Of a stretch of DNA of 64,000 nucleotides, positions 8,638-46,500 are shown piece by piece. The notes beneath the pieces are model-generated. The model saw only the letters and a program-made list of their open reading frames with translations, was not told the DNA's origin and made no database searches. Location of the stretch: positions 83,266,001-83,330,000 of the forward strand of contig NC_086375.1 of assembly GCF_036588685.1 (NCBI RefSeq), in the 5' to 3' direction. The position numbers were made by a program, and so were the translations under genes. The stretch comes from Mytilus trossulus. Taxonomy: Eukaryota. The first letter of the stretch is position 1, and each line of letters starts with the position of its first letter.

Positions 8638-8654
8638 GTTAGTACGCAGAATCT

Positions 8655-9155: not shown

Positions 9156-9337
9156 GCCACAAAATTACAAATGTAAACCAATTCAAACAGGAAAAATCAA
9201 CGTTCTAATCTATATACAAACAGAAAATTATTATTATTATTTACAGGCAGGTCGATCAGTAAGCCATCAACCAATCAATCAATCAATCATTTAAAAATGT
9301 TTTGGTGAACAGTTTGATTTCGCTATTGCATAAATAT

Positions 9338-10382: not shown

Positions 10383-10434
10383 CTGAAAGAAAATTACATT
10401 TATAATTTGAGGTTTTTTATAAATATAAAAAAAA

Positions 10435-12099: not shown

Positions 12100-12315
12100 C
12101 TGTGGATTCGTTATTATTCGTTGGATACCAATTTTCGTGGATTTCGTGATAATACGGGAAGCACGAATCTTAATGAACAACGGACAACGAATTACAAAAA
12201 AAGCAATAAGAATGTATGCAGACTTTGGCAGAACCAAGCAATCAAATATCCACGAAAATGCAAGATTACCACAATCTCCGAAAATTGGTACCCACGAAAA
12301 TAGATGAACCCACAG
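12100..12315. mobile_element. TA-TSD MITE (Tc1/mariner type), CTGTGGATTC family
   Basis: TA|CTGTGGATTC...GAACCCACAG|TA; homologous to the copies at 49003 and 63569. Confidence 0.8.
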
Positions 12316-20847: not shown

Positions 20848-21095
20848 GACCATCTTCAATGGAAGTTACTTGAAAATCGCAGAAACATCAATCGAGTCTC
20901 TATGCTTTACAAAATCTCACACCATCTCATTGCAGTAGACCCAAACCTTTACCTTTTACCACAGCCAGTCAAAAACACCAGATTCACTAATTCATTACAA
21001 TACCAGTCAGAAGTCTACTTCGTCAATATTATCTCCCCATTACGCCAGTTCATTTTCACAATCGTAGAAATGGAAGCCATTGTTGGAATGACGCG

Positions 21096-22915: not shown

Positions 22916-23814
22916 TATGGCAAGCCAAAGTGGACAAAAAGAGCTATTTTCTAATATTAGAAAATCATTTTCTAATATTAAAAAAGAAAAGTCTAGTTAT
23001 TAATATTAGAAAATGATTTTCTAATATTAGAAAATGATTTCTTAATATTAGAAAATGCTTTTTTAATATTAAAAAATCATTTCTTAATATTAGAAAATCC
23101 TTTTTTAATATTAGAAAATCCTTTTCTAATATTAGAAAATCCTTTTCTAATATTTGAAAATCCTTTTCTAATATTAGAAAATCCTTTTCTTATATTAGAA
23201 AATCCTTTTCTAATATTAGAAAATCATTTTCTTATATTAGAAAATACTTTTTTAATATTAGAAATTCATTTTCTAATATTAGAAAATCAAAAGTAATTTC
23301 TTATATTAGAAATTCATTTTCTAATATTAATAAATCATTTTCTAATACTAAAAAATCATTTTCTAATATTAGAAAATCATTTTCTAATATAAGAAAATCA
23401 TTTTCTAATATTAGAAAATCATTTTATAATATTAGAAAATCATTTTTTAATATTAGAAAATCATTTTCTAATATTAAAAAATAAGGTACTTTTTAATATT
23501 AGAAAAGGATTTTCTAATATTAAAAAATGGTTTTCTAATATTAAAAAAGGATTTTCTAATATTAAAAAAGGATTTTCTAATATTAAGAAATGATTTTTTA
23601 ATATTAAAAAATCATTTTCTAATATTAAAAAGTACCTTATTTTTTAATATTAGAAAATGATTTTCTAATATTAAAAAATGAATTTCTAATATTAGAAAAT
23701 GATTTTCTAATATTAAAAAATGATTTTCTAATATTAGAAAATGATTTTCTAATATTAGAAAATGATTTTTTAATATTAGAAAATAGCTCTTTTTGTCCAC
23801 TTTGGCTTGCCATA
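22916..23814. mobile_element. Intact non-autonomous TIR element (TAT...ATA termini, 6-bp TSD; IS3EU-like) made of 21-bp quasi-palindromic repeats
   Basis: TIR TATGGCAAGCCAAAGTGGACAAAAAGAGCTATTTT. TSD GAGTTA at 22910-22915 and 23815-23820. Internal unit (TTTTCTAATATTAGAAAATCA)n. Confidence 0.9.
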
Positions 23815-26800
23815 GAGTTAACACTGATGATGTTTTGTGGGAGTGTGTTCCACAGTACAGAACTGTGAATAGAAAAAAGCTGTACTTGAAGTAGTCTGTT
23901 CTTGTGCTAAATGTTTGGTATCAGTCGGAAACCAGGTTGAAATAGAACAAAAGAATCGAACTCTCTATAAGCTATCAGAGAAGGCGAAAAAAGACTACTG
24001 TATAAAATTGAGAATGGAAATGGGGAATGTGTCAAAGAGACAACAACCCGACCAAATAAAAAAACAACAACAGAAGGTCACCAACAGGTCTTCAATGTAG
24101 CGAGAAATTCCCGCACCCGGAGGCGTCCTTCAGCTTGCCCCTAAACAAATATATACTAGTTCAGTGATAATGAACGCCATACTAATTTCCAAATTGTACA
24201 CAAGAAACTGATGTTTTTTTTTTTGCATTCGTCTCAAACTTTGGCAACACCCAGCCCGCAGTGATTGATTTATTATAAAAAAAATATTAAAATAAATACT
24301 GTCAGCTTCCCTCTGACTATGAATTATTATCTTTATTGTAAATTCTTTACAGATTATGTGAAACAAACCCAAATAAGTTTGTTATGAAACCCACGTGTAC
24401 ACAACGACACTAATGTAGAGTTATAAATTGACCAAAATTTCCCACATTTATTTTTAGCCAGACGATTGACCAATGAAAAACCAGTATAAAATTTCATGCG
24501 GACTGGGTGTTGCCAAAGTTTGAGACGAATGCAAAAAAACATCCCGTTGACCGACTTCTGAGGCCTGCTACTAATGATCCCGACAACAATGATAGTCGTT
24601 TCATATACCATTGTGTAGATAAATCAATTTAGATTTACGGCACAGTGGCGGATCCAGAGGGGGGGTTCCGGGGGTTCGCACCCCCCCTTTATTTTGGCCG
24701 ATCAATGCATTTGTATCGGGACATATGTTTTGCACCCCCCCTTTGCCCTGGGATAGCACCCCCCCCCCCCCCCTTTGGAAAATTCCTGCATCCGCCCCTG
24801 CGGCATATTAAGATTAAGTAGGTTTGACAACCGAGAAATAAAAAAATAACGGGAATTCGGGACTGAGTATCATTTTTCAAAAAAAATAGTTAAGTAACTT
24901 GTGTTATATTAAGGTATATAGGAAATTTTTTTTGAGACAAGTGCCTGTGCGCGTCATTCCAACAATGGCTTCCATTTCTACGATTGTGAAAATGAACTGG
25001 CGTAATGGGGAGATAATATTGACGAAGTAGACTTCTGACTGGTATTGTAATGAATTAGTGAATCTGGTGTTTTTGACTGGCTGTGGTAAAAGGTAAAGGT
25101 TTGGGTCTACTGCAATGAGATGGTGTGAGATTTTGTAAAGCATAGAGACTCGATTGATGTTTCTGCGATTTTCAAGTAACTTCCATTGAAGATGGTCGGT
25201 TACACGCCATTATTCCGACAGCCCATTAGTCCGACAGCCCAAATGGTCCGACAACCCATTAGTCCGACAACCCAAAAGTCCGACAACCCATTGCTCCGAC
25301 AGCCCAAAACTCCGACAACCCATAAGTCCGACACTGATGGTATCAGGGGAAAATAAAATGTGTCTGTCTGTATTATTACGTTTAGATATGTAATAACATA
25401 TTTTAAGACATAATCCCGTATATATAACATGAGGCTAAGGTAGTTCGAATACTTTCTATATATATTCAATTCGAAATCTGTATATATATAGAATAAAACA
25501 GAAAAGAATATGTCATTTTCCAAATTAAAGGATCTTAAAGAGCATACATTTATAAATCAAAAACAACCATTGGTGATACGAGCTACTGATGACAACCCGA
25601 GGATGACAACCCCGCCCAAACATTTCGGTCGACATGCAGGAAGTGTTTGAGTTGTGAATCTGAAAAAGCATCACACAGTATAACTGACTTATATAAATAT
25701 TGAAATCAAATTTCAGAAATAATTTCTTGTAGTTCCTGAGTAAAATGTGACGACAGTTTTCAACTTGGCTGTCACATGTTATGCGTAATGAATTTGAAAA
25801 AGTATCACACGCCACAGCCGACTTCAATTAACCTTTCAGAAATCCTTGTAATGTAGTTCATGAAAAAAGATAGAACGAAAATATTTATGGGACGGACGGA
25901 CAAACTGACGGATGGACGGTTAGACGATACGACAGACAGAGGTAAAACAGTCTACCCCCACTTTTTCGAAGCGGCAGTCTAATGATTGGGTCAACATTCA
26001 TGACATTAAAACATTACAATACTAATATGATATAATTATCTTTATAACCCTATAAGCCTCGGTCACAATCGGAGCCAAGACAAAATAGAAAAAAAACCCA
26101 ACTAACACATGGATATCAAATAACAGTCAGTATCAAGACATGTAATCCATAATTCAAAAGAACTAACAAATTGAATGTAATCATCATTTTCCCCCATAAT
26201 AGTAATGTTTTCTTGTGTTAACAAAATTTGTCTTATTTATCTTACTTTTTAAAGTTCTTATATGTGCTAGAAATATGGTGAAAGAGTTCCACCCTCAAAT
26301 TATTATGAAGTGAGCATTCGATTGAAAAATAACTCCCATCCTCAACTTTATCAGCTGTACAAAACGATTTTTTTTAGTATCGAGCATTTCCAATTCTTAA
26401 TGTAATGGAAGAGCACCGATTGTGAATTAACATTTAACCTACCTTTCTTAAAATCAATAATATCTAAATATTTTTCTTCTTCTTGAAAAATGCTTTAAAC
26501 GAAAAACAAATGTCAAGTTTCTTACAAATCACATAATGTACTAAGTTTTTAAACTTAGACAATATGACAAAGACACAAGCAGGACAAGAATGTCACACAT
26601 TGTCTTAGATTTTTTACTAGTTTGTTATTGACTTTCATACTGCAATCATTCTATTTGAGCATTAAAATGCGTTGACTGTATATTTCTGCAACAAAATTAA
26701 TTTAAATAAAACTCAGATGAGTGATACAAGGAGAGAAAGTGCTGCGAAAAAAAACGGCGGGTAGTGTCATCAAACTCCGATATATTTATTTTATATGTAG

Positions 26801-27235
26801 TTAATAGTGGGGAAAACATCACTCCCCTGATACGCGAAAAGGGGGAGCCGAAGATCTAGTTTAAAAGTCTTAGATGCATGATTTTTTTATTAGTTGTTAG
26901 TGGCTATGAACTACAGTGCTTTCAGATAACTCCGAATACTCTCAGATATGTTCCTAGTGTCTTTTTGTTGTCGGGATGTACATGTTCCCAGCCACATTCA
27001 CTTGTTTTATTGTCCATCTGATGAGTTAAGCCTTTTTCAACTGATTTTTATAGTCTGTTCTTTTGTTGAACTGTTATACCACTGTCCCAGGTTAGGGGAG
27101 GGTTGGGATCCCGCTATCATGTTTGATACCGCCACATTATTTATGTATCTGCCTGTCCCAAGTCAGGAGCCTGTTATTCAGTGGTTGTCGTTTGTTTATG
27201 TGTTACATATTTGTGTTTCGTTCATTTTTTTATAC

Positions 27236-27335
27236 NNNNNNNNNNNNNNNNNNNNNNNNNNNNNNNNNNNNNNNNNNNNNNNNNNNNNNNNNNNNNNNNN
27301 NNNNNNNNNNNNNNNNNNNNNNNNNNNNNNNNNNN
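27236..27335. other. Assembly gap (100 N)
   Basis: Run of N; true size and relative orientation of the flanks are unknown. Confidence 1.
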
Positions 27336-30300
27336 ATTAAACATAAGTCATGTGACTAACTAAACTATCACTATTATTATACCTATAGTGATTATCAACA
27401 CTACAGCTCCACCTGCAATATATTAAACATAAGTCATGTGACTAACTAAACTATCACTATTATTATACCTATAGTGATTATCAACACTACAGCTCCACCT
27501 GCAATGAATTAAACATAAGTCATGTGACTAACTAAACTATCACTATTATTATACCTATAATGATTATCAACACTACAGCTCCACCTGCAATGAATTAAAC
27601 ATGGGTCATGTGACTAACTAAACTATCACTATTATTATACCTATAATGATTATCAACACTACAGCTCCACCTGCAATGAATTAAACATAAGTCATGTGAC
27701 TAACTAAACTATCACTATTATTATACCTATAGTGATTATCAACACTACAGCTCCACCTGCAATGAATTAAACATTGGTCATGTGACTAACTAAACTATCA
27801 CTATTATTATACCTATAATGATTATCAACACTACAGCTCCACCTGCAATGAATTAAACATAAGTCATGTGACTAACTAAACTATCACTATTATTATACCT
27901 ATAGTGATTATCAACACTACAGCTCCACCTGCAATGAATTAAACATAAGTCATGTGACTAACTAAACTATCACTATTATTATACCTATAGTGATTATCAA
28001 CACTACAGCTCCACCTGCAATGAATTTAACATAAGTCATGTGACTAACTAAACTATCACTATTATTATACCTATAGTGATTATCAACACTACAGCTCCAC
28101 CTGCAATGAATTAAACATAAGTCATGTGACTAACTAAACTATCACTATTATTATACCTATAGTGATTATCAACACTACAGCTCCACCTGCAATGAATTAA
28201 ACATAAGTCATGTGACTAATAAACTATCACTATTATTATACCTATAGTGATTATCAACACTACAGCTCCACCTGCAATGAATTTAACATAAGTCATGTGA
28301 CTAACTAAACTATCACTATTATTATACCTATAGTGATTATCAACACTACAGCTCCACCTGCAATGAATTAAACATAAGTCATGTGACTAACTAAACTATC
28401 ACTATTATTATACCTATAGTGATTATCAACACTACAGCTCCACCTGCAATGAATTAAACATAAGTCATGTGACTAACTAAACTATCACTATTATTATACC
28501 TATAGTGATTATCAACACTACAGCTCCACCTGCAATGAATTAAACATGGGTCATGTGACTAACTAAACTATCACTATTATTATACCTATAGTGATTATCA
28601 ACACTACAGCTCCACCTGCAATGAATTAAACATAAGTCATGTGACTAACTAAACTATCACTATTATTATACCTATAGTGATTATCAACACTACAGCTCCA
28701 CCTGCAATGAATTAAACATAAGTCATGTGACTAACTAAACTATCACTATTATTATACCTATAATGATTATCAACACTACAGCTCCACCTGCAATGAATTA
28801 AACATAAGTCATGTGACTAACTAAACTATCACTATTATTATACCTATAATGATTATCAACACTACAGCTCCACCTGCAATAAATCAAACATAAGTCATGT
28901 GACTAACTAAACTATCACTATTATTATACCTATAGTGATTATCAACACTACAGCTCCACCTGCAATGAATTAAACATAAGTCATGTGACTAACTAAACTA
29001 TCACTATTATTATACCTATAGTGATTATCAACACTACAGCTCCACCTGCAATGAATTAAACATAAGTCATGTGACTAACTAAACTATCACTATTATTATA
29101 CCTATAATGATTATCAACACTACAGCTCCACCTGCAATGAATTAAACATTGGTCATGTGACTAACTAAACTATCACTATTATTATACCTATAGTGATTAT
29201 CAACACTACAGCTCCACCTGCAATGAATTAAACATAAGTCATGTGACTAACTAAACTATCACTATTATTATACCTATAGTGATTATCAACACTACAGCTC
29301 CACCTGCAATGAATTAAACATAAGTCATGTGACTAACTAAACTATCACTATTATTATACCTATAATGATTATCAACACTACAGCTCCACCTGCAATGAAT
29401 TAAACATAAGTCATGTGACTAACTAAACTATCACTATTATTATACCTATAGTGATTATCAACACTACAGCTCCACCTGCAATGAATTAAACATAAGTCAT
29501 GTGACTAACTAAACTATCACTATTATTATACCTATAGTGATTATCAACACTACAGCTCCACCTGCAATGAATTAAACATAAGTCATGTGACTAACTAAAC
29601 TATCACTATTATTATACCTATAATGATTATCAACACTACAGCTCCACCTGCAATGAATTAAACATAAGTCATGTGACTAACTAAACTATCACTATTATTA
29701 TACCTATAGTGATTATCAACACTACAGCTCCACCTGCAATGAATTAAACAAGTCATGTGACTAACTAAACTATCACTATTATTATACCTATAGTGATTAT
29801 CAACACTACAGCTCCACCTGCAATGAATTAAACATAAGTCATGTGACTAACTAAACTATCACTATTATTATACCTATAGTGATTATCAACACTACAGCTC
29901 CACCTGCAATGAATTAAACATAAGTCATGTGACTAACTAAACTATCACTATTATTATACCTATAATGATTATCAACACTACAGCTCCACCTGCAATGAAT
30001 TAAACATAAGTCATGTGACTAACTAAACTATCACTATTATTATACCTATAGTGATTATCAACACTACAGCTCCACCTGCAATAAATTAAACATAAGTCAT
30101 GTGACTAACTAAACTATCACTATTATTATACCTATAGTGATTATCAACACTACAGCTCCACCTGCAATGAATTAAACATAAGTCATGTGACTAACTAAAC
30201 TATCACTATTATTATACCTATAGTGATTATCAACACTACAGCTCCACCTGCAATGAATTAAACATAAGTCATGTGACTAACTAAACTATCACTATTATTA

Positions 30301-33300
30301 TACCTATAGTGATTATCAACACTACAGCTCCACCTGCAATGAATTAAACATAAGTCATGTGACTAACTAAACTATCACTATTATTATACCTATAATGATT
30401 ATCAACACTACAGCTCCACCTGCAATGAATTAAACATAAGTCATGTGACTAACTAAACTATCACTATTATTATACCTATAATGATTATCAACACTACAGC
30501 TCCACCTGCAATGAATTAAACATGGGTCATGTGACTAACTAAACTATCACTATTATTATACCTATAATGATTATCAACACTACAGCTCCACCTGCAATGA
30601 ATTAAACATAAGTCATGTGACTAACTAAACTATCACTATTATTATACCTATAGTGATTATCAACACTACAGCTCCACCTGCAATGAATTAAACATAAGTC
30701 ATGTGACTAACTAAACTATCACTATTATTATACCTATAGTGATTATCAACACTACAGCTCCACCTGCAATGAATTAAACATAAGTCATGTGACTAACTAA
30801 ACTATCACTATTATTATACCTATAATGATTATCAACACTACAGCTCCACCTGCAATGAATCAAACATAAGTCATGTGACTAACTAAACTATCACTATTAT
30901 TATACCTATAGTGATTATCAACACTACAGCTCCACCTGCAATGAATTAAACATAAGTCATGTGACTAACTAAACTATCACTATTATTATACCTATAGTGA
31001 TTATCAACACTACAGCTCCACCTGCAATGAATTAAACATAAGTCATGTGACTAACTAAACTATCACTATTATTATACCTATAATGATTATCAACACTACA
31101 GCTCCACCTGCAATGAATTAAACATAAGTCATGTGACTAACTAAACTATCACTATTATTATACCTATAGTGATTATCAACACTACAGCTCCACCTGCAAT
31201 GAATTAAACATAAGTCATGTGACTAACTAAACTATCACTATTATTATACCTATAATGATTATCAACACTACAGCTCCACCTGCAATGAATTAAACATTGG
31301 TCATGTGACTAACTAAACTATCACTATTATTATACCTATAATGATTATCAACACTACAGCTCCACCTGCAATGAATTAAACATAAGTCATGTGACTAACT
31401 AAACTATCACTATTATTATACCTATAGTGATTATCAACACTACAGCTCCACCTGCAATGAATTAAACATAAGTCATGTGACTAACTAAACTATCACTATT
31501 ATTATACCTATAGTGATTATCAACACTACAGCTCCACCTGCAATGAATTAAACATAAGTCATGTGACTAACTAAACTATCACTATTATTATACCTATAGT
31601 GATTATCAACACTACAGCTCCACCTGCAATGAATTAAACATAAGTCATGTGACTAACTAAACTATCACTATTATTATACCTATAATGATTATCAACACTA
31701 CAGCTCCACCTGCAATGAATTAAACATGGGTCATGTGACTAACTAAACTATCACTATTATTATACCTATAATGATTATCAACACTACAGCTCCACCTGCA
31801 ATGAATTAAACATAAGTCATGTGACTAACTAAACTATCACTATTATTATACCTATAGTGATTATCAACACTACAGCTCCACCTGCAATGAATTTAACATA
31901 AGTCATGTGACTAACTAAACTATCACTATTATTATACCTATAATGATTATCAACACTACAGCTCCACCTGCAATGAATTAAACATAAGTCATGTGACTAA
32001 CTAAACTATCACTATTATTATACCTATAATGATTATCAACACTACAGCTCCACCTGCAATAAATCAAACATAAGTCATGTGACTAACTAAACTATCACTA
32101 TTATTATACCTATAATGATTATCAACACTACAGCTCCACCTGCAATGAATTAAACATAAGTCATGTGACTAACTAAACTATCACTATTATTATACCTATA
32201 ATGATTATCAACACTACAGCTCCACCTGCAATGAATCAAACATTAGTCATGTGACTAACTAAACTATCACTATTATTATACCTATAGTGATTATCAACAC
32301 TACAGCTCCACCTGCAATGAATTAAACATAAGTCATGTGACTAACTAAACTATCACTATTATTATACCTATAGTGATTATCAACACTACAGCTCCACCTG
32401 CAATGAATTAAACATAAGTCATGTGACTAACTAAACTATAACTATTATTATACCTATAGTGATTATCAACACTACAGCTCCACCTGCAATGAATTAAACA
32501 TAAGTCATGTGACTAACTAAACTATCACTATTATTATACCTATAGTGATTATCAACACTACAGCTCCACCTGCAATGAATTAAACATGGGTCATGTGACT
32601 AACTAAACTATCACTATTATTATACCTATAATGATTATCAACACTACAGCTCCACCTGCAATAAATCAAACATAAGTCATGTGACTAACTAAACTATCAC
32701 TATTATTATACCTATAATGATTATCAACACTACAGCTCCACCTGCAATGAATTAAACATGGGTCATGTGACTAACTAAACTATCACTATTATTATACCTA
32801 TAATGATTATCAACACTACAGCTCCACCTGCAATGAATTAAACATAAGTCATGTGACTAACTAAACTATCACTATTATTATACCTATAATGATTATCAAC
32901 ACTACAGCTCCACCTGCAATGAATTAAACATAAGTCATGTGACTAACTAAACTATCACTATTATTATACCTATAGTGATTATCAACACTACAGCTCCACC
33001 TGCAATGAATTAAACATAAGTCATGTGACTAACTAAACTATCACTATTATTATACCTATAGTGATTATCAACACTACAGCTCCACCTGCAATGAATTAAA
33101 CATAAGTCATGTGACTAACTAAACTATCACTATTATTATACCTATAGTGATTATCAACACTACAGCTCCACCTGCAATGAATTAAACATAAGTCATGTGA
33201 CTAACTAAACTATCACTATTATTATACCTATAGTGATTATCAACACTACAGCTCCACCTGCAATGAATTAAACATAAGTCATGTGACTAACTAAACTATC

Positions 33301-36300
33301 ACTATTATTATACCTATAATGATTATCAACACTACAGCTCCACCTGCAATGAATTAAACATAAGTCATGTGACTAACTAAACTATCACTATTATTATACC
33401 TATAGTGATTATCAACACTACAGCTCCACCTGCAATGAATTAAACATAAGTCATGTGACTAACTAAACTATCACTATTATTATACCTATAGTGATTATCA
33501 ACACTACAGCTCCACCTGCAATGAATCAAACATAAGTCATGTGACTAACTAAACTATCACTATTATTATACCTATAATGATTATCAACACTACAGCTCCA
33601 CCTGCAATAAATCAAACATAAGTCATGTGACTAACTAAACTATCACTATTATTATACCTATAATGATTATCAACACTACAGCTCCACCTGCAATGAATTA
33701 AACATAAGTCATGTGACTAACTAAACTATCACTATTATTATACCTATAGTGATTATCAACACTACAGCTCCACCTGCAATGAATTAAACATAAGTCATGT
33801 GACTAACTAAACTATCACTATTATTATACCTATAGTGATTATCAACACTACAGCTCCACCTGCAATGAATTAAACATAAGTCATGTGACTAACTAAACTA
33901 TCACTATTATTATACCTATAATGATTATCAACACTACAGCTCCACCTGCAATGAATTAAACATGGGTCATGTGACTAACTAAACTATCACTATTATTATA
34001 CCTATAATGATTATCAACACTACAGCTCCACCTGCAATGAATTAAACATGGGTCATGTGACTAACTAAACTATCACTATTATTATACCTATAATGATTAT
34101 CAACACTACAGCTCCACCTGCAATAAATCAAACATAAGTCATGTGACTAACTAAACTATCACTATTATTATACCTATAGTGATTATCAACACTACAGCTC
34201 CACCTGCAATGAATTTAACATAAGTCATGTGACTAACTAAACTATCACTATTATTATACCTATAGTGATTATCAACACTACAGCTCCACCTGCAATGAAT
34301 TAAACATAAGTCATGTGACTAACTAAACTATCACTATTATTATACCTATAGTGATTATCAACACTACAGCTCCACCTGCAATGAATTAAACATAAGTCAT
34401 GTGACTAACTAAACTATCACTATTATTATACCTATAGTGATTATCAACACTACAGCTCCACCTGCAATGAATTAAACATAAGTCATGTGACTAACTAAAC
34501 TATCACTATTATTATACCTATAGTGATTATCAACACTACAGCTCCACCTGCAATGAATCAAACATAAGTCATGTGACTAACTAAACTATCACTATTATTA
34601 TACCTATAGTGATTATCAACACTACAGCTCCACCTGCAATGAATTAAACATAAGTCATGTGACTAACTAAACTATCACTATTATTATACCTATAGTGATT
34701 ATCAACACTACAGCTCCACCTGCAATGAATTAAACATGGGTCATGTGACTAACTAAACTATCACTATTATTATACCTATAGTGATTATCAACACTACAGC
34801 TCCACCTGCAATGAATTAAACATAAGTCATGTGACTAACTAAACTATCACTATTATTATACCTATAGTGATTATCAACACTACAGCTCCACCTGCAATGA
34901 ATTAAACATAAGTCATGTGACTAACTAAACTATCACTATTATTATACCTATAATGATTATCAACACTACAGCTCCACCTGCAATGAATTAAACATAAGTC
35001 ATGTGACTAACTAAACTATCACTATTATTATACCTATAGTGATTATCAACACTACAGCTCCACCTGCAATGAATTAAACATAAGTCATGTGACTAACTAA
35101 ACTATCACTATTATTATACCTATAATGATTATCAACACTACAGCTCCACCTGCAATGAATTAAACATAAGTCATGTGACTAACTAAACTATCACTATTAT
35201 TATACCTATAGTGATTATCAACACTACAGCTCCACCTGCAATGAATTAAACATGGGTCATGTGACTAACTAAACTATCACTATTATTATACCTATAGTGA
35301 TTATCAACACTACAGCTCCACCTGCAATGAATTAAACATGGGTCATGTGACTAACTAAACTATCACTATTATTATACCTATAGTGATTATCAACACTACA
35401 GCTCCACCTGCAATGAATCAAACATAAGTCATGTGACTAACTAAACTATCACTATTATTATACCTATAGTGATTATCAACACTACAGCTCCACCTGCAAT
35501 GAATTAAACATAAGTCATGTGACTAACTAAACTATCACTATTATTATACCTATAGTGATTATCAACACTACAGCTCCACCTGCAATGAATTAAACATGGG
35601 TCATGTGACTAACTAAACTATCACTATTATTATACCTATAATGATTATCAACACTACAGCTCCACCTGCAATGAATTAAACATAAGTCATGTGACTAACT
35701 AAACTATCACTATTATTATACCTATAGTGATTATCAACACTACAGCTCCACCTGCAATGAATCAAACATAAGTCATGTGACTAACTAAACTATCACTATT
35801 ATTATACCTATAGTGATTATCAACACTACAGCTCCACCTGCAATGAATTAAACATAAGTCATGTGACTAACTAAACTATCACTATTATTATACCTATAAT
35901 GATTATCAACACTACAGCTCCACCTGCAATGAATCAAACATAAGTCATGTGACTAACTAAACTATCACTATTATTATACCTATAATGATTATCAACACTA
36001 CAGCTCCACCTGCAATGAATTAAACATAAGTCATGTGACTAACTAAACTATCACTATTATTATACCTATAATGATTATCAACACTACAGCTCCACCTGCA
36101 ATGAATTAAACATAAGTCATGTGACTAACTAAACTATCACTATTATTATACCTATAGTGATTATCAACACTACAGCTCCACCTGCAATATATTAAACATA
36201 AGTCATGTGACTAACTAAACTATCACTATTATTATACCTATAATGATTATCAACACTACAGCTCCACCTGCAATGAATTAAACATGGGTCATGTGACTAA

Positions 36301-37050
36301 CTAAACTATCACTATTATTATACCTATAATGATTATCAACACTACAGCTCCACCTGCAATGAATTAAACATAAGTCATGTGACTAACTAAACTATCACTA
36401 TTATTATACCTATAGTGATTATCAACACTACAGCTCCACCTGCAATAAATCAAACATAAGTCATGTGACTAACTAAACTATCACTATTATTATACCTATA
36501 GTGATTATCAACACTACAGCTCCACCTGCAATAAATCAAACATAAGTCATGTGACTAACTAAACTATCACTATTATTATACCTATAGTGATTATCAACAC
36601 TACAGCTCCACCTGCAATGAATTAAACATAAGTCATGTGACTAACTAAACTATCACTATTATTATACCTATAATGATTATCAACACTACAGCTCCACCTG
36701 CAATGAATTAAACATAAGTCATGTGACTAACTAAACTATCACTATTATTATACCTATAGTGATTATCAACACTACAGCTCCACCTGCAATGAATTAAACA
36801 TAAGTCATGTGACTAACTAAACTATCACTATTATTATACCTATAATGATTATCAACACTACAGCTCCACCTGCAATGAATTAAACATGGGTCATGTGACT
36901 AACTAAACTATCACTATTATTATACCTATAGTGATTATCAACACTACAGCTCCACCTGCAATGAATTAAACATGGGTCATGTGACTAACTAAACTATCAC
37001 TATTATTATACCTATAATGATTATCAACACTACAGCTCCACCTGCAATAT
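27336..37050 (-). repeat. 86-bp tandem array, 113 copies; each unit is an intron 3' end, a splice acceptor and the TM-coding exon start of the cadherin gene
   Basis: Period 86 (27336 to 27422); 9715 bp plus 3 deleted bases equals 113 units. Minus strand: TTAGTCACATGACTTATGTTTAATTCATTGCAG|GT GGA GCT GTA GTG TTG ATA ATC ACT ATA GGT ATA ATA ATA GTG ATA GTT TAG. Diverged units continue to about 37465. Confidence 0.95.
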
Positions 37051-37225
37051 ATTAAACATGGGTCATGTGAAGAACGATATTATCACTATTATAATACCGA
37101 TAAAAATAATAATCCTTAAAACTGCACCTACAACAAATGAAACAGAGGTCATGTGACAAACTGAACTTTCACTATTATAATACCTATAAAGATTATCAAC
37201 ACTATAGCACAACCTACCACAAATT

Positions 37226-37413
37226 GGGTCTCATTGGGGTCTAAGTGTGACAGGGGATTGACGATTTTTTGTAAGCGTGACACGTGAAAGTCAAATTACA
37301 CTGGAAGTTGCAAAAGAAATGAGAATTGCTTTCTTACATAGTGTAAGCGGGATACTGGAATCTGACAAAACAGTAAGAGGGATCCGGGATCAGAACCCCC
37401 AAATGAGACCCCC
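37226..37413. mobile_element. Small MITE inserted in a diverged array unit
   Basis: GGGTCTCATTGGGG / CCCCAAATGAGACCC inverted ends, ATT on both flanks; array-like sequence resumes at 37414. Confidence 0.6.
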
Positions 37414-37933
37414 ATTAAACATAGGTCATGTGATGAACCTTATAACTATCTCTATTATTATAGTATTGTTTGTCAGAGTTGAATAAAAAATTGTTTTCTC
37501 TAATTTTCTTTCCTTGGCATGTGTAATACCATTAATGGTTATGAGGCTGTATAACTGTGATGATATCTATATCAGTGATTATTGCAAAGGCTTTAAATTA
37601 TTAAGCTGTGAAACTATCCATCACCAGGGGCAGATCTAGCCATTTTAAAAAGGTGGGGTTCGCAACCCAGGACAAATGAGGGGGGGGGGGGGGATTCCAA
37701 CTATATGTCCCTATTCAAATGCATTGATCAGCCAAAAAAAAGGGGGGGTCCAACCCCTGGATCTGTCAATAATGCACCACTGATGCAAGGCTCTATCAAA
37801 CCTCTAATCTATGTTACGTCATGTCACGTGAAAACTACTTAAGAAATGAAATATATAACACAATACACAAATATTAATAATTGGACTTTTTCAACATTTC
37901 TGGCAACCTATCTGACAAGTAAAACCCTTTTAC

Positions 37934-40368
37934 CAAGGGGTACAATCAAAATCACATGATGGATATACACACACCGGAAGGAACAGTCGAGCAGACCGCT
38001 TGAAAGGTAAGTAGTCGTATTTACTTGTTTATATCAATAAAATTTAATAAATAAGGTAGTGCACCGAATGTCGGATACTATCTAGTTTTGAAATACACAA
38101 TTATCCTTGCTGGAAAGCGTGCAGTTAATGCTAACACTTCGACACAGTTCCAAAATTTCGCCAGATAACACACACACCTCATATGTTTTTATAACAAAAT
38201 TTCTGAAAGTCAATGTTATGGGAGTTTTCAGTGGAAAAAGAATGCATTTTTTAATTCATCATATTTAATTTTGATTTAATCAATCAAATAATTACGATAA
38301 ATGGTCGTTTGACAGGAGAATAGCTGATTTTTCACAAATGATACCACACACACCCCATTAATTCAAATGATAACACACACACACACAAACCGAAACTGAA
38401 GGTATGTACAAAGTTTCAGGCAAAGTCAAATGATGTATTTTACTACATTATACTAAAAACATAAGAACAATTTAATATAAGCTTAACCTATATAACATTT
38501 TAATTGAAAAGCAATCTCTCATCGCTTTAATTTTCTTATATGTCGCGTGGTGTATCTTACAAAACCAGCTGGTTAGAGGTCTTAAAAATTTATACAAGTA
38601 TTCTCGGAATGGTGTTCTGTTCGACAAATCATTTTGCAGGTTTCACGACCTTGATTGTTTATCGAATGTTAATCGAAGGGACTTAACGCATTTGTATAAC
38701 GAAGGGCGAACAGGTTGATTAACATACAGAACCGAAATCATCTCATTTGCATATCAAGATAAATACATAAATTTCAGTTTTCCTACCGTAAAAGGGCTTT
38801 AAAGCCAGTTATAGTCGTTAACCTCTCCCGTAGTAGTAACTCACGCATGACACCAATAAAGGCAACAGTTGTATACCGCTGTTCAAAACTCATACATCCA
38901 TGGACAAAAAACAAAATCGGGGTAACAAACCAAAACCGAGCGAAACGCATTAAATATAAGAGAACAACGACACAACACCGAAACGCAAAACACACAGAAA
39001 TGGACCAAGCATCAGACAAAAGACCACGAGAATAACAAATATAACATGAAAACCAAATACATGAATTTGGGATAGACAAGTACCGTGCCACGTCTTATCT
39101 CAAAAATAAGAGGAAACACAACCGACTCAACGTTAAAATGCAACACACAGAGAAACGAACAATAATATAACAATGACCATATTCCTGACTTGGTACAGGA
39201 CACTTTTTTTTTTTAAAGGGGAATAAAAGTGGTGGGTTGAACCTGGTTTTATGGCATGCCAAACCTCGAACATATCTTAAAACAGAAGCGATGAGAAATA
39301 AATGTTTAAATAGATTATATCTAGTGTTAGATTATTTATATTTTTCTTATATTCATTTAAAAAAAATCAATTCTTTCTATTTATTTATAGAATATGTCAC
39401 ATTTGTGCAAGCACTGTGGAAAGAAATTTAAAGGTCGAAGTGGTTTACGACAACACGAGATGAGGCATGATGAACAGGGGCCATATTCCTGAATGCAAGC
39501 TTGTTTTTTCAACAAGTCAAACTTTACTTCCCATTTGGCAAACAAAAAACACCAAAACCATAAGCCATTCATATGTAAAACGTTTGGCAAGTCATTTGCA
39601 ACAGATGCCTATCTGAAGAACCACTGCCTGTATGAGGACAAGGGAGGCGATCACAAATGTACCCAATGTGAAGCTACATTAAGTCGTGCATCCCATCAGA
39701 AAGACCACATGGATATGCACACAGGGATAAAATCCAACATTTGCAAGATATGCGGCAAAGCATACCGCTTCAGAAGCAGTCTTTCGAGGCAAAGCAAAAC
39801 CCACGAAGTTGCTGAAGGTCTTAGTTATGAATGAGTGATATTTGTAACAAGACCTTCACACAAAAACGCTATCTCCAGGAGCATAATAATGTGTGTGTGT
39901 TATCCGTTGTTTTTTTCGGTGTGTGTGGTATCATTTTTGAAAATTGGAGTTTCGACAATAAACCAAGCGTTTATCGTAAAATAAATTATTGTATAAATCA
40001 ATAGTAGCGGTGTTGAATTGAGTCATGCATTTATTTTGCCGAACAAATCATAAAGAAAACAATTTTATGAAATTTTGAATAAAAATATTCAAAGTGTGTG
40101 CTTATCCGTTGAAAAAATATTGAGTGTGTGTGTGATCCGTCGAAAATTTTGAACTGTGTCGAAGTGTTTGCAATAACTGCACGCTTTCTAGCAAAAACAA
40201 TTGTGTATTTTAAAGCTACATACTATCCGACATTCGGTGTGCCAACTTATTAATCAAAATTTAATTGATATAAACAAGAAAATGCAACTACTAACCTTTC
40301 AAGCGGCGAGTTCTACTGTAACTTCCGGTGTGTGTATATCCATCACATGATTTTGATTGTACCCCTTG
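37934..40368. mobile_element. Long-TIR non-autonomous DNA transposon (CA..TG termini, 6-bp TSD) carrying a C2H2 zinc-finger gene
   Basis: CAAGGGGTACAATCAAAATCA.. / ..TGATTTTGATTGTACCCCTTG, with inverted similarity over at least 230 bp. TSD TTTTAC at 37928-37933 and 40369-40374. Confidence 0.9.
39394..39890 (+). pseudogene. Decayed tandem C2H2 zinc-finger gene (about 6 fingers)
   Basis: MSHLCKHCGKKFKGRSGLRQHEMRH..PYS*..HKPFICKTFGKSF..HKCTQCEATLSRASHQKDHMDMHTG..CKICGKAY..YE*VICNKTF. In-frame TGA codons sit at Cys positions. A TTATTTATAG acceptor precedes the ATG. Confidence 0.85.
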
Positions 40369-40416
40369 TTTTACCATGTTGATGTAAAACTTGACACAAA
40401 TATAACTATAACTTAC

Positions 40417-40542
40417 CTATACCCCCTCCTATAACTGCCCCTGATAAACCTCCCTCTTCCTTCTCTTCTGGAACAATTGTCTGTTGTTCATGTAGCCCTA
40501 TGACTGCAGGGCAAACCTCAGTCTCAAATAGATTTTCTCTTT
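40417..40542 (-). CDS. Juxtamembrane exon ending in the first half of the TM segment (not in the ORF track)
   Basis: CCCAATAG| acceptor and |GTAAGT donor, 126 nt, phase 1-1: (E)RENLFETEVCPAVIGLHEQQTIVPEEKEEGGLSGAVIGGGI(G). Confidence 0.88.
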
Positions 40543-43500
40543 CTATTGGGAAAAAAATCTAAAATTTGTTTAGGCAGATCAAACAATGTATCAAACATTA
40601 AATCAGAATTCAAAATTTCCAGAAAAAAATAAAACTAGAGGTCCCAAGACACAGTTTAGTAGTCACAAGACACATCTGTAGTTTCAGAGAAGATTTTTGT
40701 TAAACTATTTTCAGATTCAGTAACTCTCAGTATTCTCTTATACACTATATATAGAATAATATCTTTTTTGCTTTCGATCTATCTGCAATAAAATCAAGAT
40801 AGGTAGAGATCATGAAATCAATGCCATTATCCTTTGATCAGTCTTTACAACATAATCCTATGGGTATAATATGAAAGTTCATGAAATATCAAGAAAACTC
40901 TTTTCTCTCATTCAAAATGTTGTGATAGGTGTTTGTATATGTATAAATGACATGTGTATTTCATTAGTGGTTGCCACATCCTAATTTCTAGTAGAATGAG
41001 AATTTGGTGAAGGTCGTCAGTCTTTGTTAGCTTTTAATAACAAAATTCACCTCATTTTTTTTTTAACAATTTAGAGCTTGCATATTATATAGACACATGT
41101 CTAATGTTGATGACTGCATGCTGCCATCTAGAACTATAATGGTTGGGTTGCTGTTTTATTGAGGTATATACCCACACATCATCTTCAAATAATTTACAAT
41201 TTTGTTAGTTTACCTAAATCTGTACAACTTTTATACAGCATGTCATTGACTTCCTCCTCTGTGAAAGCCATGTCATTTGTATTTAATACAACAAAGCTGA
41301 CGGTCACTGTCCCGTCTCCATTATCAGTGATACTTTCAACATAAACTTGAACCTCTGCTGTGTCAGCACTTCTACGCTTACGTCTTCTGGATGTTGTGGA
41401 TATTCCTTTCCTGTCTAGTAATTCCAGGATGATGTCATTCATTCTAGCTTTATACTCGGGTTCATCAAGGTCAGCATTTTTGGGCACATCTATAGTGAGT
41501 TTTACAGATTTCCCACATGCATAATTGTCTTTGTCATACAGTGGAATACATATGTTAGTTTTATTGTTTTCACAAGCGTTAGCATTACATGAGCTAGTAA
41601 AATACTGACACCTAGGTCCTGTCCTGTCCTGAGGACAGTTACATATGTAGGTTCTATGTTTGTCTACACACTGTCCTCCTGATAAACAGGCTGAGTTTTG
41701 ACAATCGTCTATGCTATCTGAGCAAGTTCCTCCCGTCCACCCTGGAGCACAGTTACATACATAAGATTTACCATCCTCAGATAAACAGGCAGCATTATTC
41801 TTGCATGGATTTTTAGTGCATGGATTTTCAGGCTGTAATGATTTTTCACATATAAGTCCATTGAAATCTTTTGGACAGATGCATGAAAATGTGTCAATGC
41901 CATCCACACATGTAGCCCCATTCTGACAGGTGTCCTCTCCTGTACAATCATCAATGTTTAAACAGGAGTAGCCATCCCCTGTAAAACCATGTTCACAGTT
42001 ACACATATGGTAGGTGGCATTTAATTTTACACATCTAGCATTCTCATCACAGGTTTTACCATCGTTAAAACATCTATCAACCTGTTTGATTAGAATAGTG
42101 ACTTCCTGTGATGACTGCTCAAATGTTTCTACATTTCTTACTCTGATTACAACTGTAACTGAGGTACCAGTATAGTTGGCTAAGCTCTTTTCCAGAACCA
42201 AATGTTTATTTTCTTTTATAGAGAAGAAACCACCAGGATTTTTTTCAAATTCAAATATAATATTGTCTTCCACTGATTGGTTAACATTATATAATGTTCC
42301 TATAATTGTTCCTACATCTGAATCTTCTGCCACATCTAAGTTGTCTAGGGCAACAGACGGCAGTTCTGCAGCAAGTACTTGTATGTTTGTGACCAGCAGT
42401 GTGATGTTTTGTTGTAGATATTGAATAGGATCCCCATTGTCTGATACCCGTACTGTAATTGTAATCACTGGATTGGCACTTGTCAAAACAGCTGTAGGAA
42501 TGGCTGAATTCACTAGTAACTTACTCCCATCAATCTAAAAATATATAGTTTATTTGTATCATCACTGATTAGAAAGTTCTGTTTTAATATGAAAATAACC
42601 ATCCACGATTTCATGTGCCTCTTCCAAGTTAGAAACATTGTATGGTACATTGTACTTGTTTTGAGTCTCAAATGTTTTTTTTGTTTGGAGAATTTGGTGA
42701 TCATGGCAGATCTCTGGTAATATGTTTTTTTATTTACTTACAACATTTTATAACCTGCCATTATTTAGTTTCTGACGAACAGTGTGAACACCTGTCTATT
42801 GTTTAAGACTGTATAAAGATCTTTAGATGTCATTTGGATATTGAAGAGTATAGCTCAGATGTTTGTAAATTTATAAATCTTTTCAAAAGAAATGCTTAAA
42901 CACATTGCTAAGGCATAATTGAATACTTGAAAAACATAGTGCTATTATCAGTTTTATATTTTAATTCTCCACTTACCTGGAAAAGATCAGAATTGGGTCC
43001 CTTTAAAACAAAGCTGTGAACTTGATTCTGATCAGGATCTTTGGTTGAAAACTGTCCTATCAAGTCTCCAACTTTTGCGTCTGCCAGTATTGTTTGTGAC
43101 CCTGATAGAACAATGGAAGTTGGAGCTTCATTCTTATCATTAACTTCAATCTGTAAGTTCTGAAACATAGAAACACCTGTGTAATGATGGATTCAGTATC
43201 ATAGGTTTGGTGAGGACAAAGCAATAAAAAAAAAAGATGAAATATCCCATTGAATAAAAATTCCAATCTTATTATGAGGATAATAAACATCGAATGGTGA
43301 GCTAATGAGAAAGAACCAAATTGGAATAAATGCCAGTCTTTTGGATTCATAGACTTCCACCTTTATCAAGAGAAAATTTTCCCTTTGAAAGTACAGTGAA
43401 ACTTCTCTAAACCGGTCCCTCTTAATACCGGTTCTCCCTTCATATCGGCCAAATCAACAAGTCCCGGCCGGCGTGTATGTAAATAAGGTAATCAGGTAAC

Positions 43501-46500
43501 CTTATAAAACCGGCCACCCCTTTAAACCGGATACCGGCCGTTCTTTGTGTATTTGTGCAATCAAAATCAATAAAATATCACCTCATAAAACCGGCCTTCT
43601 CATTTGTAATCATTAGTCCATACACAATACTGTTATATAAACAAACAAGTTAATCCGGTCAATTAGACACCTGCATGGTCACTGAGTAGTGTTAACCTGT
43701 CAATGTCAAATCAATACCCGAATAAATTATCGGTTGAGAGATTATGATCTTCACCCACGCTAATCAAAGATGATAATTCATTTTCATCAAATGTTTTAGC
43801 TGGGCTCCAGCTTTATTTGATCATTTAAAAAAATATGTTTTAGGCATTTACAGAAATTAATATTGATGTTTTCTTTAAACTGATGACACGCTTTTATTAC
43901 AGTGCTTGCGTGTTTGTGTATTGCTTTTGCGGAAATGATTTTAATATCATTAATAACATCGTATGGTACCGATGACAATTTTTAGATGATTATATGGAAG
44001 TGTTTTTTATTTTATCTTTAATTATATGGAAGTGTGAATGGAAGTGTTTAAGATCTTCACTGGCCTACAAATCGTTGTTGCTTTTTTCAATAACATTATA
44101 TATAGATATTAAAACTGTTTTGTTATATAGTTGCATTTTATTTGTTATTCCTGCAAAATAAAAAATAATAAAGATACAAATGATGTTTTAATATTTATTT
44201 CATAATCAATATGGAATACAAAGCTAAATTTACACAACAAAACACACTTAAAGATTGAGGTACAATACATGGTAAAAAAATACAAATCCACACATATTGA
44301 AGGGAAGTAACTATTATATTGAAGGAAAGTAACTCTTGCTTATTTCAAATTCAATAAACCGGCCACCCCTGAAAACCGGCCGAATCCCGTGGTCCGACGG
44401 GCGGCCGGTTTTGAGAAGTTTCACTGTATGATTAGTTCACCTGCATCCAGCTACCTATATTGAAAACATTACCAATTGTGCCTATATAAATATTTATAAA
44501 ACATAATATTGATACAGTATTATACAACTTGTGTACCTTTGCAGAACAAGTTGTGACAAGGGAGATTACTCCACAAACTATAAATTAGATTTGATTTGCT
44601 TTTTGGTGTTTTAATGCCACTTTTAAGCACTGCATTTAGACTATTTGTGGCAGCCAGTTTTTATTGGTGGAGGAAGCTGCAGAGCCAGAAGAAAACTACC
44701 GACCTTCATTAGGAAAACTGACAATTCTAATCAAATAAGATTGGAGTTGAGTGCACCAGCAAGAGCGGAGTTCAAAAACACAACCTCAGTGTTAACTGGC
44801 TAGTGATTACAGTAGTAACTGTTTAGACCACTCAGCCATGAAGGCCCACTATGAATTAGAAGCCTAAACCAAAATGCATCCCATATAGAAAGTTATAAAA
44901 CATAGTATTGTTATAGTATTTTGCAGCTTGTGTAACTTCGTAAAACAAATTGTAACAAGGGAGATAACTCCAGTTTTACACAAACTATTAATGAAAAGCC
45001 AATACATTAATGCATCCTACATACATCAAAACTTTTCTTTCCATAAAATTTATTTTTCCTTATGATATTACCTTCTGTATAGAAAACTCTCCATCAGAGC
45101 ACTGCACCACTAAGTTATAAATCTTTGTTGTCTCAAAATCTAAAACATTGGTCAACACCAAGGACTTTTCTGTAATATCGTTGGTGAAAATGGCAAATGG
45201 TGTAGATTTAGTTTGAAGATTACATGAATGTGATTGGCCAGCATCAGGATCATCAACCTGTATGGCTGTGATGATAGTCTTTAGAGGTGTGTCTTCATCA
45301 AGAGGAGAAACATTGCCAAAAATAATAGACTCAGGAGGGTCATTCAAATCTCTGACAAATATAGTGATTTCTTTCTATAAATAAAAACACACATGTCATT
45401 ACTTTTGATTACTTGTGTTAAAGCTCTTTAATGCATTCAGCTTTTAACAAGACATATGTAGTACTTTTCCCATTGCATGTTAGATTTATTTGTGAAGCTG
45501 AATGTGTACATTTCTGGTTTACACAGAACATGAAATCTAAGTAAAGAGTAAAAGTTGAGTGTTTTAATAACATCTATTATTCCTGTGTTTGTATTATGAT
45601 CTATTAAATGCCTTGATGATCCTACTGATTTATTTGTTATGAACTTATGTCTGACATGTTTTTTTGTCAAATAACTTAATGTTTGTTTTCATTTCATTAT
45701 AATTATCTAAGCAACAATAGACAAATGATAATCAAAGTGTGTGTCAAATTTTAAGGTTGTGTTTCTGTTGTGTTGTAGTCTCTTATATTTGATGTGTTTC
45801 CCTCAGTTTTAGTTTGTAATGCAAATTTGTTTTTTTCTCAAGCAATTTATGAATTTCGAACAGCGGTATGCTACTGTTGCCTTTATTTATCCTGCCATCT
45901 CTTACATACCAAAACTGTAATTTGTGATTAACCTTTGGATTGTTATTTGTTTATATCCACTATGGCTATATATACCTGCACAGATTTCGAAGGTATTCTA
46001 TCATCCCTGCTCTCTACTAACATCTTATATTCATTATTTGTTTATATCCACGAAGCTATATATACCTGAACAGATTTAGAAGGTGTCCCATCATCCTTGC
46101 TCACTACTAACATCTTATATTCATTATTTGTTTCATAATCTAATGTTAACTGTCCAGCTACTAGCTTGTTTCCAAAAATGGCAAAATATCCTGGAAAAAA
46201 GTCAGAAGGAACTGAAAATCATTTTCATTCCTATCTGTATTGTTAAGCTAGTTTCATCTATCTAATTAATCAGATTCTATTCATTTGACTGATTTTTTTT
46301 AAAACTTGAGGAAATTAATAACACCTTTTACTGCATAACACTCATCTGTTTTATAAGGTTATAAAATGATTAACTGTGCACAAATTAGTATTAAATATAA
46401 ACTAACCTATAAAGTCTGATGTTCAGTAGTTGTCGTTTGTTGGTGGGGTTATATGTTTCTCCTTTCTCGTTTTTTTAAATAGGTTAGACAGTTGGTTTTC

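What the first reader, a model, noticed from the sequence alone, without database searches (positions are those of the whole stretch)
27336..40542. The 86-bp satellite is a 113-fold amplified splice acceptor plus TM exon of the neighbouring cadherin-EGF gene
Seen: the last unique exon (40417-40542, minus) ends ...GLSGAVIGGGI G|gtaagt in phase 1. Every array unit on the same strand reads ...TTGCAG|GT GGA GCT GTA GTG TTG ATA ATC ACT ATA GGT ATA ATA ATA GTG ATA GTT TAG. Splicing to any unit gives GLSGAVIGGGIGGAVVLIITIGIIIVIV*, a typical single-pass TM helix followed at once by a stop. I found no other TM exon for this gene in the window. Inference: the pre-mRNA carries at least 113 near-identical competing acceptors. 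Using any of them would give a tail-less membrane-anchored cadherin or an NMD substrate. A full-length receptor would need the spliceosome to skip about 10 kb of decoys to reach a read-through copy, presumably in or past the gap. Array copy number could then tune the ratio of tail-less to signalling isoforms.
Basis: partly seen in the sequence, partly recalled or inferred. Interest (0 to 1): 0.92.

Follow-up and report, generated by a model that had tools for sequence, protein, structure and literature searches.

The report
Intronic satellite copied from transmembrane exon
A tandem array of at least 12 kb inside a mussel cadherin gene consists of about 144 copies of the front of the gene's own membrane-anchor exon plus its splice acceptor, and the transcripts seen appear to skip the copies and use only the last, intact one.

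Summary
An 86-bp array (27336-37215, 114.9 copies) lies downstream of exon 40417-40542. In it, 113 units carry TTGCAG|GT followed by a hydrophobic reading frame that ends in TAG.

The predicted read-through copy exists, outside the window. A second block of the same satellite (29.4 copies, C3:83259036-83261564) ends in a 72-nt exon, L013:3014-3085. That exon shares the acceptor and its first 50 nt with the units. It then continues with KRKKTDS and a CAG|GTAATG donor.

Spliced contigs from four public runs (two species labels) join 40417 to a unit-type acceptor. They stop matching the decoy exactly at the last shared base.

The array is therefore a "mirage"-type minisatellite: a tandem duplication of an intron-exon boundary. 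This kind is known from amphioxus. Another agent of this scan reported similar junction repeats in a dynein gene of this genome. What is new here is the scale.

The isoform-tuning idea is not supported. No decoy-spliced form was seen, and no signalling tail was found. The acidic, proline-rich ORF at 7554-8375 is a duplicated tetraspanin 3' fragment. It sits on a contig between two gaps that is probably misplaced. The cadherin most likely ends within 16 residues of the membrane helix.

The parts
41214..42536 (-). Large exon: end of the cadherin repeats, EGF repeats, and a juxtamembrane module with an RRRKRR site
   Evidence: Pfam EGF/hEGF/EGF_3 hits; translation; contig pieces end at 42536 and the joint 40542->41214 has CT..AC ends
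40417..40542 (-). Last ectodomain exon, including the first part of the TM helix (...CPAV...GLSGAVIGGGI G|), with a phase-1 GTAAGT donor
   Evidence: Sequence; spliced joints on both sides in X15, X6 and X2, and on the 3' side also in X1; collinear with the juxtamembrane region of homologue P0071
37216..40416 (-). Unique 5' part of the intron, carrying dispersed repeats
   Evidence: Skipped by the joint 37039->40415 in four runs; the part at 40300-40376 matches hundreds of loci in the genome
37042..37215 (-). Two degenerate edge copies of the unit (acceptors GTGGTAG and TTGTAG)
   Evidence: Sequence; the one of them scored differs from the consensus at 24 of 86 positions, and the first canonical-type unit beside them at 5 of 86
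27336..37041 (-). Block 1 of the 86-bp array: 113 canonical decoy units. Each has 36 nt of intron with a branch-point-like CTTAT and TTGCAG, then the first 50 nt of the TM exon, then TAG
27236..27335 (.). Scaffold gap (100 N) at the end of block 1; not filled
1..27235 (.). Contig between the two gaps (with L013:5665-10000). Both of its ends are fold-back copies of its own interior. It is probably misplaced inside the array
   Evidence: L013:5665-9730 is the reverse complement of window 60-4005; window 23605-27235 is the reverse complement of 18810-22438 at 99.9%. Both arms stop exactly at the contig ends
7554..8375 (-). Acidic, proline-rich ORF that looks like a cytoplasmic tail. It is the last exon of a duplicated tetraspanin 3' fragment, not part of the cadherin
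10247..10349 (-). Penultimate exon of the same tetraspanin fragment (...ADDIEGTSNGYLFPFDFGK...)
45943..46133 (-). Second junction duplication in the same gene: a 90-bp unit, 2.1 copies, covering the last 61 nt of a cadherin exon, its donor and 25 nt of intron

Best explanation
The array is a locus-specific intronic minisatellite of the 'mirage' type. An 86-bp segment was duplicated in tandem to at least 144 copies. The segment spans the last 36 nt of the intron (branch-point-like CTTAT, weak pyrimidine tract, TTGCAG) and the first 50 nt of the cadherin's TM exon. Only the 3'-most copy is continuous with the rest of the exon: a purine-rich 22 nt encoding KRKKTDS, then the donor CAG|GTAATG. That copy is the functional TM exon. 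Every other copy meets the next unit at a TAG and has no usable donor or poly(A) signal. Shown: the anatomy, the single read-through copy, and transcripts that join exon 40417 to a unit-type acceptor and then leave the decoy sequence at the exact base where the true exon differs. Inferred: the spliceosome ignores about 141 identical upstream 3' splice sites because only the last one can be paired across an exon with a 5' splice site and an enhancer-like run (exon definition). The two blocks are most likely one array broken by the assembler, with a poor 31.6-kb contig scaffolded into the break. The mature protein probably has a very short cytoplasmic tail.
For: Array anatomy. The terminal unit of block 2 reads through into KRKKTDS plus the GTAATG donor. 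The satellite occurs only at this locus. The read-through flank and exon 40417 are each single-copy. RNA: the joint 37039->40415 (CT..AC) appears in X1, X15, X6 and X2, with 47, 48, 24 and 48 letters on the unit side. The match ends at 36992, the last shared base. The contigs then carry 116 (X15) and 85 (X2) further letters that do not fit the decoy, although 42 more reference letters were available. In X1, X15 and X2 the depth over the unit (1.5-1.8) is about what the spliced contig alone gives. The TM exon is ancestral: homologue P0071 has CP..., AVIGG and a TM helix followed by RHK, collinear with exon 40417 and then the TM exon. Edge copies are degenerate and share an old variant at both ends of the two blocks, while block 2 carries the true exon's ATT variant. 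The same kind of repeat, with undisturbed splicing, is described in amphioxus (PMC3087553, PMC3902484).
Against: The letters of the contigs beyond the shared 50 nt were not shown, so their identity with L013:3014-3035 is inferred from the divergence point only. Logan contigs drop rare variants, and NMD would remove decoy-spliced mRNAs, so non-use of decoys is not proven. In X6 the junction contig reaches only 24 letters and unit sequence is present at depth 116. That is compatible with pre-mRNA (about 0.8 per copy), but also with some decoy use. As scaffolded, 31.6 kb lie between the two blocks, and the misplacement is argued, not shown. Exon definition is a mechanistic inference and was not tested. 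The gene's 3' end is unresolved.
Confidence: 0.72

Rival explanations
1. One reading: decoy acceptors are used at an appreciable rate. They give ...IVIV* proteins without a stop-transfer signal, or NMD substrates, so array length sets the yield of productive mRNA.
For: All 138 canonical units keep a complete 3' splice site identical to the real one. They are transcribed first. NMD would hide their products. The X6 junction contig breaks after 24 letters and unit sequence is present in that run.
Against: No contig in four runs continues from the junction into the decoy-specific sequence. In three runs there is little or no unit sequence apart from the spliced contig. Decoys lack a donor (best candidate TAG|GTATAA) and have no AATAAA or ATTAAA (unit consensus read by eye). 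Amphioxus mirages do not disturb splicing. There is no signalling tail to be tuned.
Confidence: 0.15
2. Recursive (ratchet) splicing. Each unit's CAG|GTGGAG acts as a zero-length recursive site, and the array is removed 86 nt at a time until the last copy. There the stronger GTAATG donor wins.
For: Every acceptor is directly followed by GT. The end product would be identical to what is observed.
Against: The regenerated donor TAG|GTGGAG is weak. 86-nt steps would have to succeed more than 140 times. No intermediates (exon 40417 joined to a full decoy) appear in the contigs.
Confidence: 0.06
3. Each unit is a 30-nt phase-1/phase-1 exon plus a 56-nt GT-AG intron, so variable numbers of GAVVLIITIG decapeptides are spliced in.
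For: The phases fit, and ATAG|GTATAA is a possible donor.
Against: Contigs of X1, X15 and X2 run collinearly 47-48 letters past the acceptor, straight through that donor. The donor is poor. The product would lengthen a TM helix in 10-residue steps.
Confidence: 0.02
4. The satellite came first and the gene captured its last unit as an exon; or the resemblance is chance in AT-rich DNA; or the array is an assembly artefact.
For: AT-rich repeats with T at the second codon position read as hydrophobic. The array borders gaps.
Against: The satellite is found only at this locus. The TM segment is collinear with that of homologues from other molluscs. The terminal copy is identical to the units over 50 nt plus the acceptor. 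Position-specific variants argue for a real array, as does unit sequence in an independent run.
Confidence: 0.04

Closest known systems
'Mirage' minisatellites of amphioxus (Adh3, globins BflGb6/BflGb9, troponin C, PGBD5)
   Same: These are tandem duplications spanning an intron-exon boundary. Copies keep AG/GT signals, the authentic junction is still used, edge copies escape homogenisation, and cluster length varies (PMC3087553, PMC3902484).
   Different: The amphioxus globin clusters have 3-6 units (repeat units of 10-160 bp across globins and Adh3). This one has about 144 units over at least 12.4 kb, is in a mollusc, copies the start of a TM exon so each copy encodes a near-complete helix with a stop, and broke the assembly.
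Splice-junction minisatellites in a dynein gene of this same genome (scan note s1-826633)
   Same: Exon-intron boundaries are copied in tandem into the neighbouring intron, with splicing at the original sites. This cadherin gene also has a 90-bp donor-junction duplicate and an 81-bp repeat related to a downstream acceptor.
   Different: Those are reported as many short duplications. Here a single junction is amplified to satellite scale. I did not check that note.
Repeat expansions that create splice acceptors (CAG repeats; bioRxiv 10.1101/2023.10.16.562581, abstract only)
   Same: A tandem repeat offers many acceptors to an upstream donor.
   Different: There the acceptors are used and give aberrant RNAs. 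Here the acceptors are true copies of a real site and appear to be ignored.
Tandem alternative-exon clusters (Dscam type; from general knowledge)
   Same: Arrays arise by tandem duplication of an exon with its acceptor, and one copy is chosen per transcript.
   Different: Dscam copies are complete exons with donors and a selector/docking RNA system. Here the copies are truncated and lack a donor, and no complementarity flanking the array was found above chance.

Membership tests
Mirage-type junction minisatellite | The repeat unit spans an intron-exon boundary of the host gene | tested here: met
   The unit is 36 nt of intron with TTGCAG plus the first 50 nt of the TM exon
Mirage-type junction minisatellite | The authentic junction is the outermost copy, continuous with the rest of the exon | tested here: met
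   The last unit of block 2 runs on into KRKKTDS and a GTAATG donor at L013:3014-3085. It is single-copy
Mirage-type junction minisatellite | Copies retain splice signals | tested here: met
   138 of 138 canonical units keep AG. 141 of the 144 units examined have TTGCAG and end in a stop, and one further TTGCAG unit is the true exon
Mirage-type junction minisatellite | Normal mRNA splicing is not disturbed | tested here: met
   Spliced contigs of four runs leave the decoy sequence at the last shared base, and none continues into a decoy. Caveat: contigs miss rare forms, and the letters beyond the shared part were not seen
Mirage-type junction minisatellite | Concerted evolution inside the array, divergent copies at its edge | tested here: met
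   Mean 1.5-2.1 differences per 86 nt among units. One degenerate edge copy differs from the consensus at 24 positions and the unit beside it at 5. The ISF variant is shared by both ends
Mirage-type junction minisatellite | Length polymorphism or instability between haplotypes and individuals | not tested
Dispersed satellite DNA family | Arrays at several loci in the genome | tested here: not met
   The own-genome search gave two candidates. The one scored is the neighbouring block, and the other is presumably the window's own array
Fat-like protocadherin (cadherin-EGF, single-pass) | Cadherin repeats, then EGF repeats, then one TM helix | tested here: met
   Pfam Cadherin and EGF hits; TM exon; homologues are auto-named 'Protocadherin Fat 4' by UniRef
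Fat-like protocadherin (cadherin-EGF, single-pass) | Long cytoplasmic signalling tail | tested here: not met
   No tail exon lies in the 3.9 kb before the convergent SAE1-like gene. The candidate endings are KRKKTDSEA* and KRKKTDSGNGYKGTVL*. The homologues' tails are also only about 40-50 residues
Recursive splice site | An acceptor juxtaposed to a functional regenerated donor, with stepwise intron removal | tested here: inconclusive
   AG|GT is present in every unit, but the donor GTGGAG is weak. No intermediates appear in the contigs. Lariats cannot be tested with these tools

The most novel reading that the evidence does not exclude
The array is not inert. Its more than 140 perfect 3' splice sites may bind U2AF/U2 and be used some of the time, with the products removed by NMD or by recursive re-splicing. 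Array length, which is likely hypervariable between individuals, would then set the speed or yield of productive splicing of this cadherin. That would make it a copy-number-encoded expression dial.
Probability: 0.12. Interest if true: 0.8.

Novelty: new member of a known kind. Interest (0 to 1): 0.5.

Why it matters
This is a natural experiment in splice-site choice. About 141 exact copies of a complete 3' splice site are transcribed before the real one, yet the observed mRNAs fit use of the last copy only. That makes the relative weight of exon definition and first-come-first-served pairing testable with simple minigenes. The case also extends 'mirage' junction minisatellites from amphioxus to a mollusc and to satellite scale, and it suggests a route by which gene-derived satellites arise. 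There is a practical side too. The array broke the assembly, attracted a misplaced contig, and would lead gene predictors to truncate the protein at the first decoy or to attach a foreign 'tail'.

Tried and rejected
1. The acidic, proline-rich ORF at 7554-8375 as the cadherin's cytoplasmic tail. Its phase-1 acceptor fits the TM exon's phase. It is rejected because this ORF and the exon at 10247-10349 are the last two exons of a tetraspanin gene. The complete copy of that gene is at C3:76.474-76.484 Mb. A Mytilus edulis model (P0151) joins the tetraspanin TM4 exon to these two exons. The window lacks the upstream tetraspanin exons.

2. RNA pairing that would loop out the array. Complementarity between the intron's 5' part and the sequence around the true exon is no better than in shuffles.

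3. Protein searches for a spliced product. The representative search was swamped by EGF proteins and gave only distant homologues. The word-index searches gave unspliced Logan fragments or the tetraspanin model.

5. A scan for a further tail exon downstream of the TM exon found nothing convincing.

7. The N gaps were not filled.
Full report
**Observation.** TRF reports an 86-bp array at 27336-37215 with 114.9 copies, 97% matches and score 18703. A 100-N gap at 27236-27335 bounds it on the left. On the minus strand, 113 of the 115 units read TTGCAG|GT followed by GGAVVLII[T/I]IGIIIVIV and a stop.

Exon 40417-40542 ends ...GLSGAVIGGGI G|gtaagt in phase 1. The two copies at the array's 5' edge (37042-37215) are degenerate. 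The one that was scored differs from the consensus at 24 of 86 positions, and the unit beside them at 5.

**The read-through copy.** A search of the window's own genome with two units found the satellite at only one other place, C3:83259036-83261564. That is 4.4-7 kb left of the window start, in the same orientation. In locus L013 (C3:83256001-83266000) this block spans 3036-5564 with 29.4 copies, and it too ends at a 100-N gap, at 5565-5664.

Its last unit on the minus strand does not meet a TAG. After the shared ...GTGATAGTT it continues with a purine-rich 22 nt encoding KRKKTDS and then CAG|gtaatg. This gives a 72-nt, phase-1/phase-1 exon at L013:3014-3085 (C3:83259014-83259085). It encodes GAVVLIIIIGIIIVIVKRKKTDS.

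Together with the end of exon 40417, this makes a normal TM helix followed by a basic stop-transfer signal. The flank of this exon and exon 40417 are each single-copy in the 1.3-Gb assembly.

**Structure of the unit.** Each unit is 36 nt of intron, then the first 50 nt of the exon, and the TAG arises at the unit-to-unit junction. The intron part holds a CTTAT branch-point-like motif, a weak pyrimidine tract and TTGCAG.

All 138 full-length canonical units keep the AG, and units differ by 1.5-2.1 positions on average. Block 1 is dominated by the ACT variant and block 2 by the ATT variant of the true exon. A rare 'ISF' variant occurs at the 5' edge of block 1 and twice in block 2. This pattern fits one array whose middle is homogenised and whose edges are older.

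**The exon is ancestral.** Distant homologues from other molluscs have a similar layout. UniRef auto-names two of them, P0078 and P0098, 'Protocadherin Fat 4'. The layout is EGF repeats, a module with a basic cleavage-like site, a CP[AS][IV] motif, a TM helix and a short tail.

Exon 40417-40542 aligns to P0071 residues 1267-1304, with score 53 against a shuffle mean of 30.7 (SD 4). The TM exon aligns directly after it, at residues 1308-1326. The satellite therefore derives from the exon, not the reverse.

**RNA evidence.** I laid Logan contigs of four public runs (X1, X15, X6, X2; two species labels, four studies) on window:36950-42600. The runs are not labelled RNA. Their contigs nevertheless skip 40543-41213 and 37042-40416 with GT..AG ends, and three of the four runs leave the unique intron stretch 40730-41107 uncovered. 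They are therefore cDNA-derived.

All four runs show the joint from 40417 to a unit-type acceptor, placed on the first canonical unit of the reference. The unit side is 47, 48, 24 and 48 letters long. In X15 and X2 the match ends at 36992, the last base shared by decoy and true exon. The contigs then carry 116 and 85 further letters that do not fit the decoy, although 42 more reference letters were available.

No contig runs from the junction into TAGTTAGTCAC. The contigs also pass straight through the ATAG|GTATAA site. This contradicts the micro-exon reading of note s1-827418 for the main transcripts.

In X1, X15 and X2 the depth over the unit (1.5-1.8) is about what the spliced contig alone gives, so they hold little or no other unit sequence. 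X6 has a unit contig at depth 116. Spread over at least 144 copies, that is about 0.8 per copy, similar to unique intron bins and far below the exon bins (about 50-96). The tool warns that contig depths are crude.

The limits of this evidence are as follows:
- I could not see the letters beyond the shared part.
- Contigs drop rare forms.
- NMD could hide decoy products.

**Where the gene ends.** An acidic, proline-rich 274-codon ORF at 7554-8375 has a phase-1 acceptor and looked like the missing tail. It is not. This ORF and the exon at 10247-10349 have a 93-98% identical copy at C3:76.48 Mb. There they follow exons with Pfam Tetraspanin hits. A Mytilus edulis protein model joins the tetraspanin TM4 exon to them. 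The window has no upstream tetraspanin exons.

The fragment sits on the 31.6-kb contig between the two gaps. Both ends of that contig are reverse-complement copies of its own interior, and both copies stop exactly at the contig ends. This looks like fold-back assembly error, so its placement inside the array has no sequence support.

Left of the TM exon the assembly is gap-free. A convergent SAE1-like (ThiF) gene ends at L014:9093, which leaves about 3.9 kb for the cadherin's 3' end. The best acceptor there gives ...KRKKTDSEA*; the exon would start at L013:2721, and 17 of the 20 bases upstream of the acceptor are pyrimidines. An unspliced read-through gives ...KRKKTDSGNGYKGTVL*, with ATTAAA at L013:2928 and 2860. 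Either way the tail is very short, so there is no 'signalling isoform' to be tuned.

**Mechanism.** The following are shown:
- the origin of the array from the exon;
- a single intact copy at the 3' end of the array;
- transcripts that fit use of that copy.

It is inferred that the decoys are ignored because only the last 3' splice site has, within 72 nt, a purine-rich enhancer-like run and a good donor (CAG|GTAATG). Decoys offer only TAG|GTATAA or worse, and no AATAAA or ATTAAA. This is exon definition. No RNA pairing that could loop out the array was found. Recursive splicing via CAG|GTGGAG remains possible but unlikely.

[quoted passage not shown] They occur in Adh3, globins, troponin C and PGBD5 (PMC3087553, PMC3902484). 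Those papers also report concerted evolution with divergent edge copies.

Another agent of this scan reported many junction minisatellites in a dynein gene of this genome (s1-826633; not checked by me). This cadherin gene has at least one more: a 90-bp donor-junction duplicate at 45943-46133. An 81-bp repeat at L013:2785-2983 is related to the candidate terminal acceptor. I found no paper describing the phenomenon in molluscs.

**Verdict.** Isoform tuning is not supported. This is a new and extreme member of a known kind, with interest 0.5.

**Tool notes.** The gaps were not filled.

Noticed in passing
L013:5665-9730 vs window 60-4005; window 18810-22438 vs 23605-27235: The contig between the two N gaps begins and ends with inverted copies of its own interior. 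One pair has 27 mismatches plus repeat-length indels over 4 kb; the other is 99.9% identical over 3.6 kb. Each copy stops exactly at a contig end, which looks like fold-back assembly artefacts.
   Followed up: partly
window 4770-12379 and C3:76478765-76486638 (L018/L022): A 7.6-kb segment holding the last two exons of a tetraspanin gene with a long acidic, proline-rich tail is present twice on the chromosome at 93-98% identity. Only the distant copy has the upstream tetraspanin exons.
   Followed up: yes
window 45943-46133: A 90-bp tandem duplicate (2.1 copies) of the last 61 nt of a cadherin exon, its GTATAT donor and 25 nt of intron. This is a donor-side junction duplication in the same gene.
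   Followed up: partly
L013:2700-2983: An 81-bp repeat (2.5 copies) lies just downstream of the TM exon's donor. It is homologous to the pyrimidine tract and first bases of the best candidate terminal exon, but the copies read CATGG where the candidate has CACAG.
   Followed up: partly
window 22259-23784: A 21-bp self-complementary tandem repeat (about 47 copies in two runs) forms the centre of the 3.6-kb palindrome.
   Followed up: no
window 49360-53900 (+) and 14620-18058 (+): Long plus-strand ORFs that look like retrotransposon gag-pol (zinc knuckles, integrase-like) lie inside a cadherin intron. A reverse-transcriptase-like LINE ORF lies in the inter-gap contig. Neither was run against Pfam.
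   Followed up: no
window 41214-41560 (minus strand): The juxtamembrane module after the EGF repeats carries RRRKRR, a furin-type basic site. Homologues have similar basic sites at the same place, which suggests ectodomain cleavage.
   Followed up: no
L014:3961-9093 (+): A convergent SAE1-like (ThiF family) gene ends about 3.9 kb from the cadherin's TM exon.
   Followed up: partly
window 40300-40376: A short dispersed repeat sits in the intron just after exon 40417. It has hundreds of near-identical copies on many chromosomes (635 first-look candidates).
   Followed up: no
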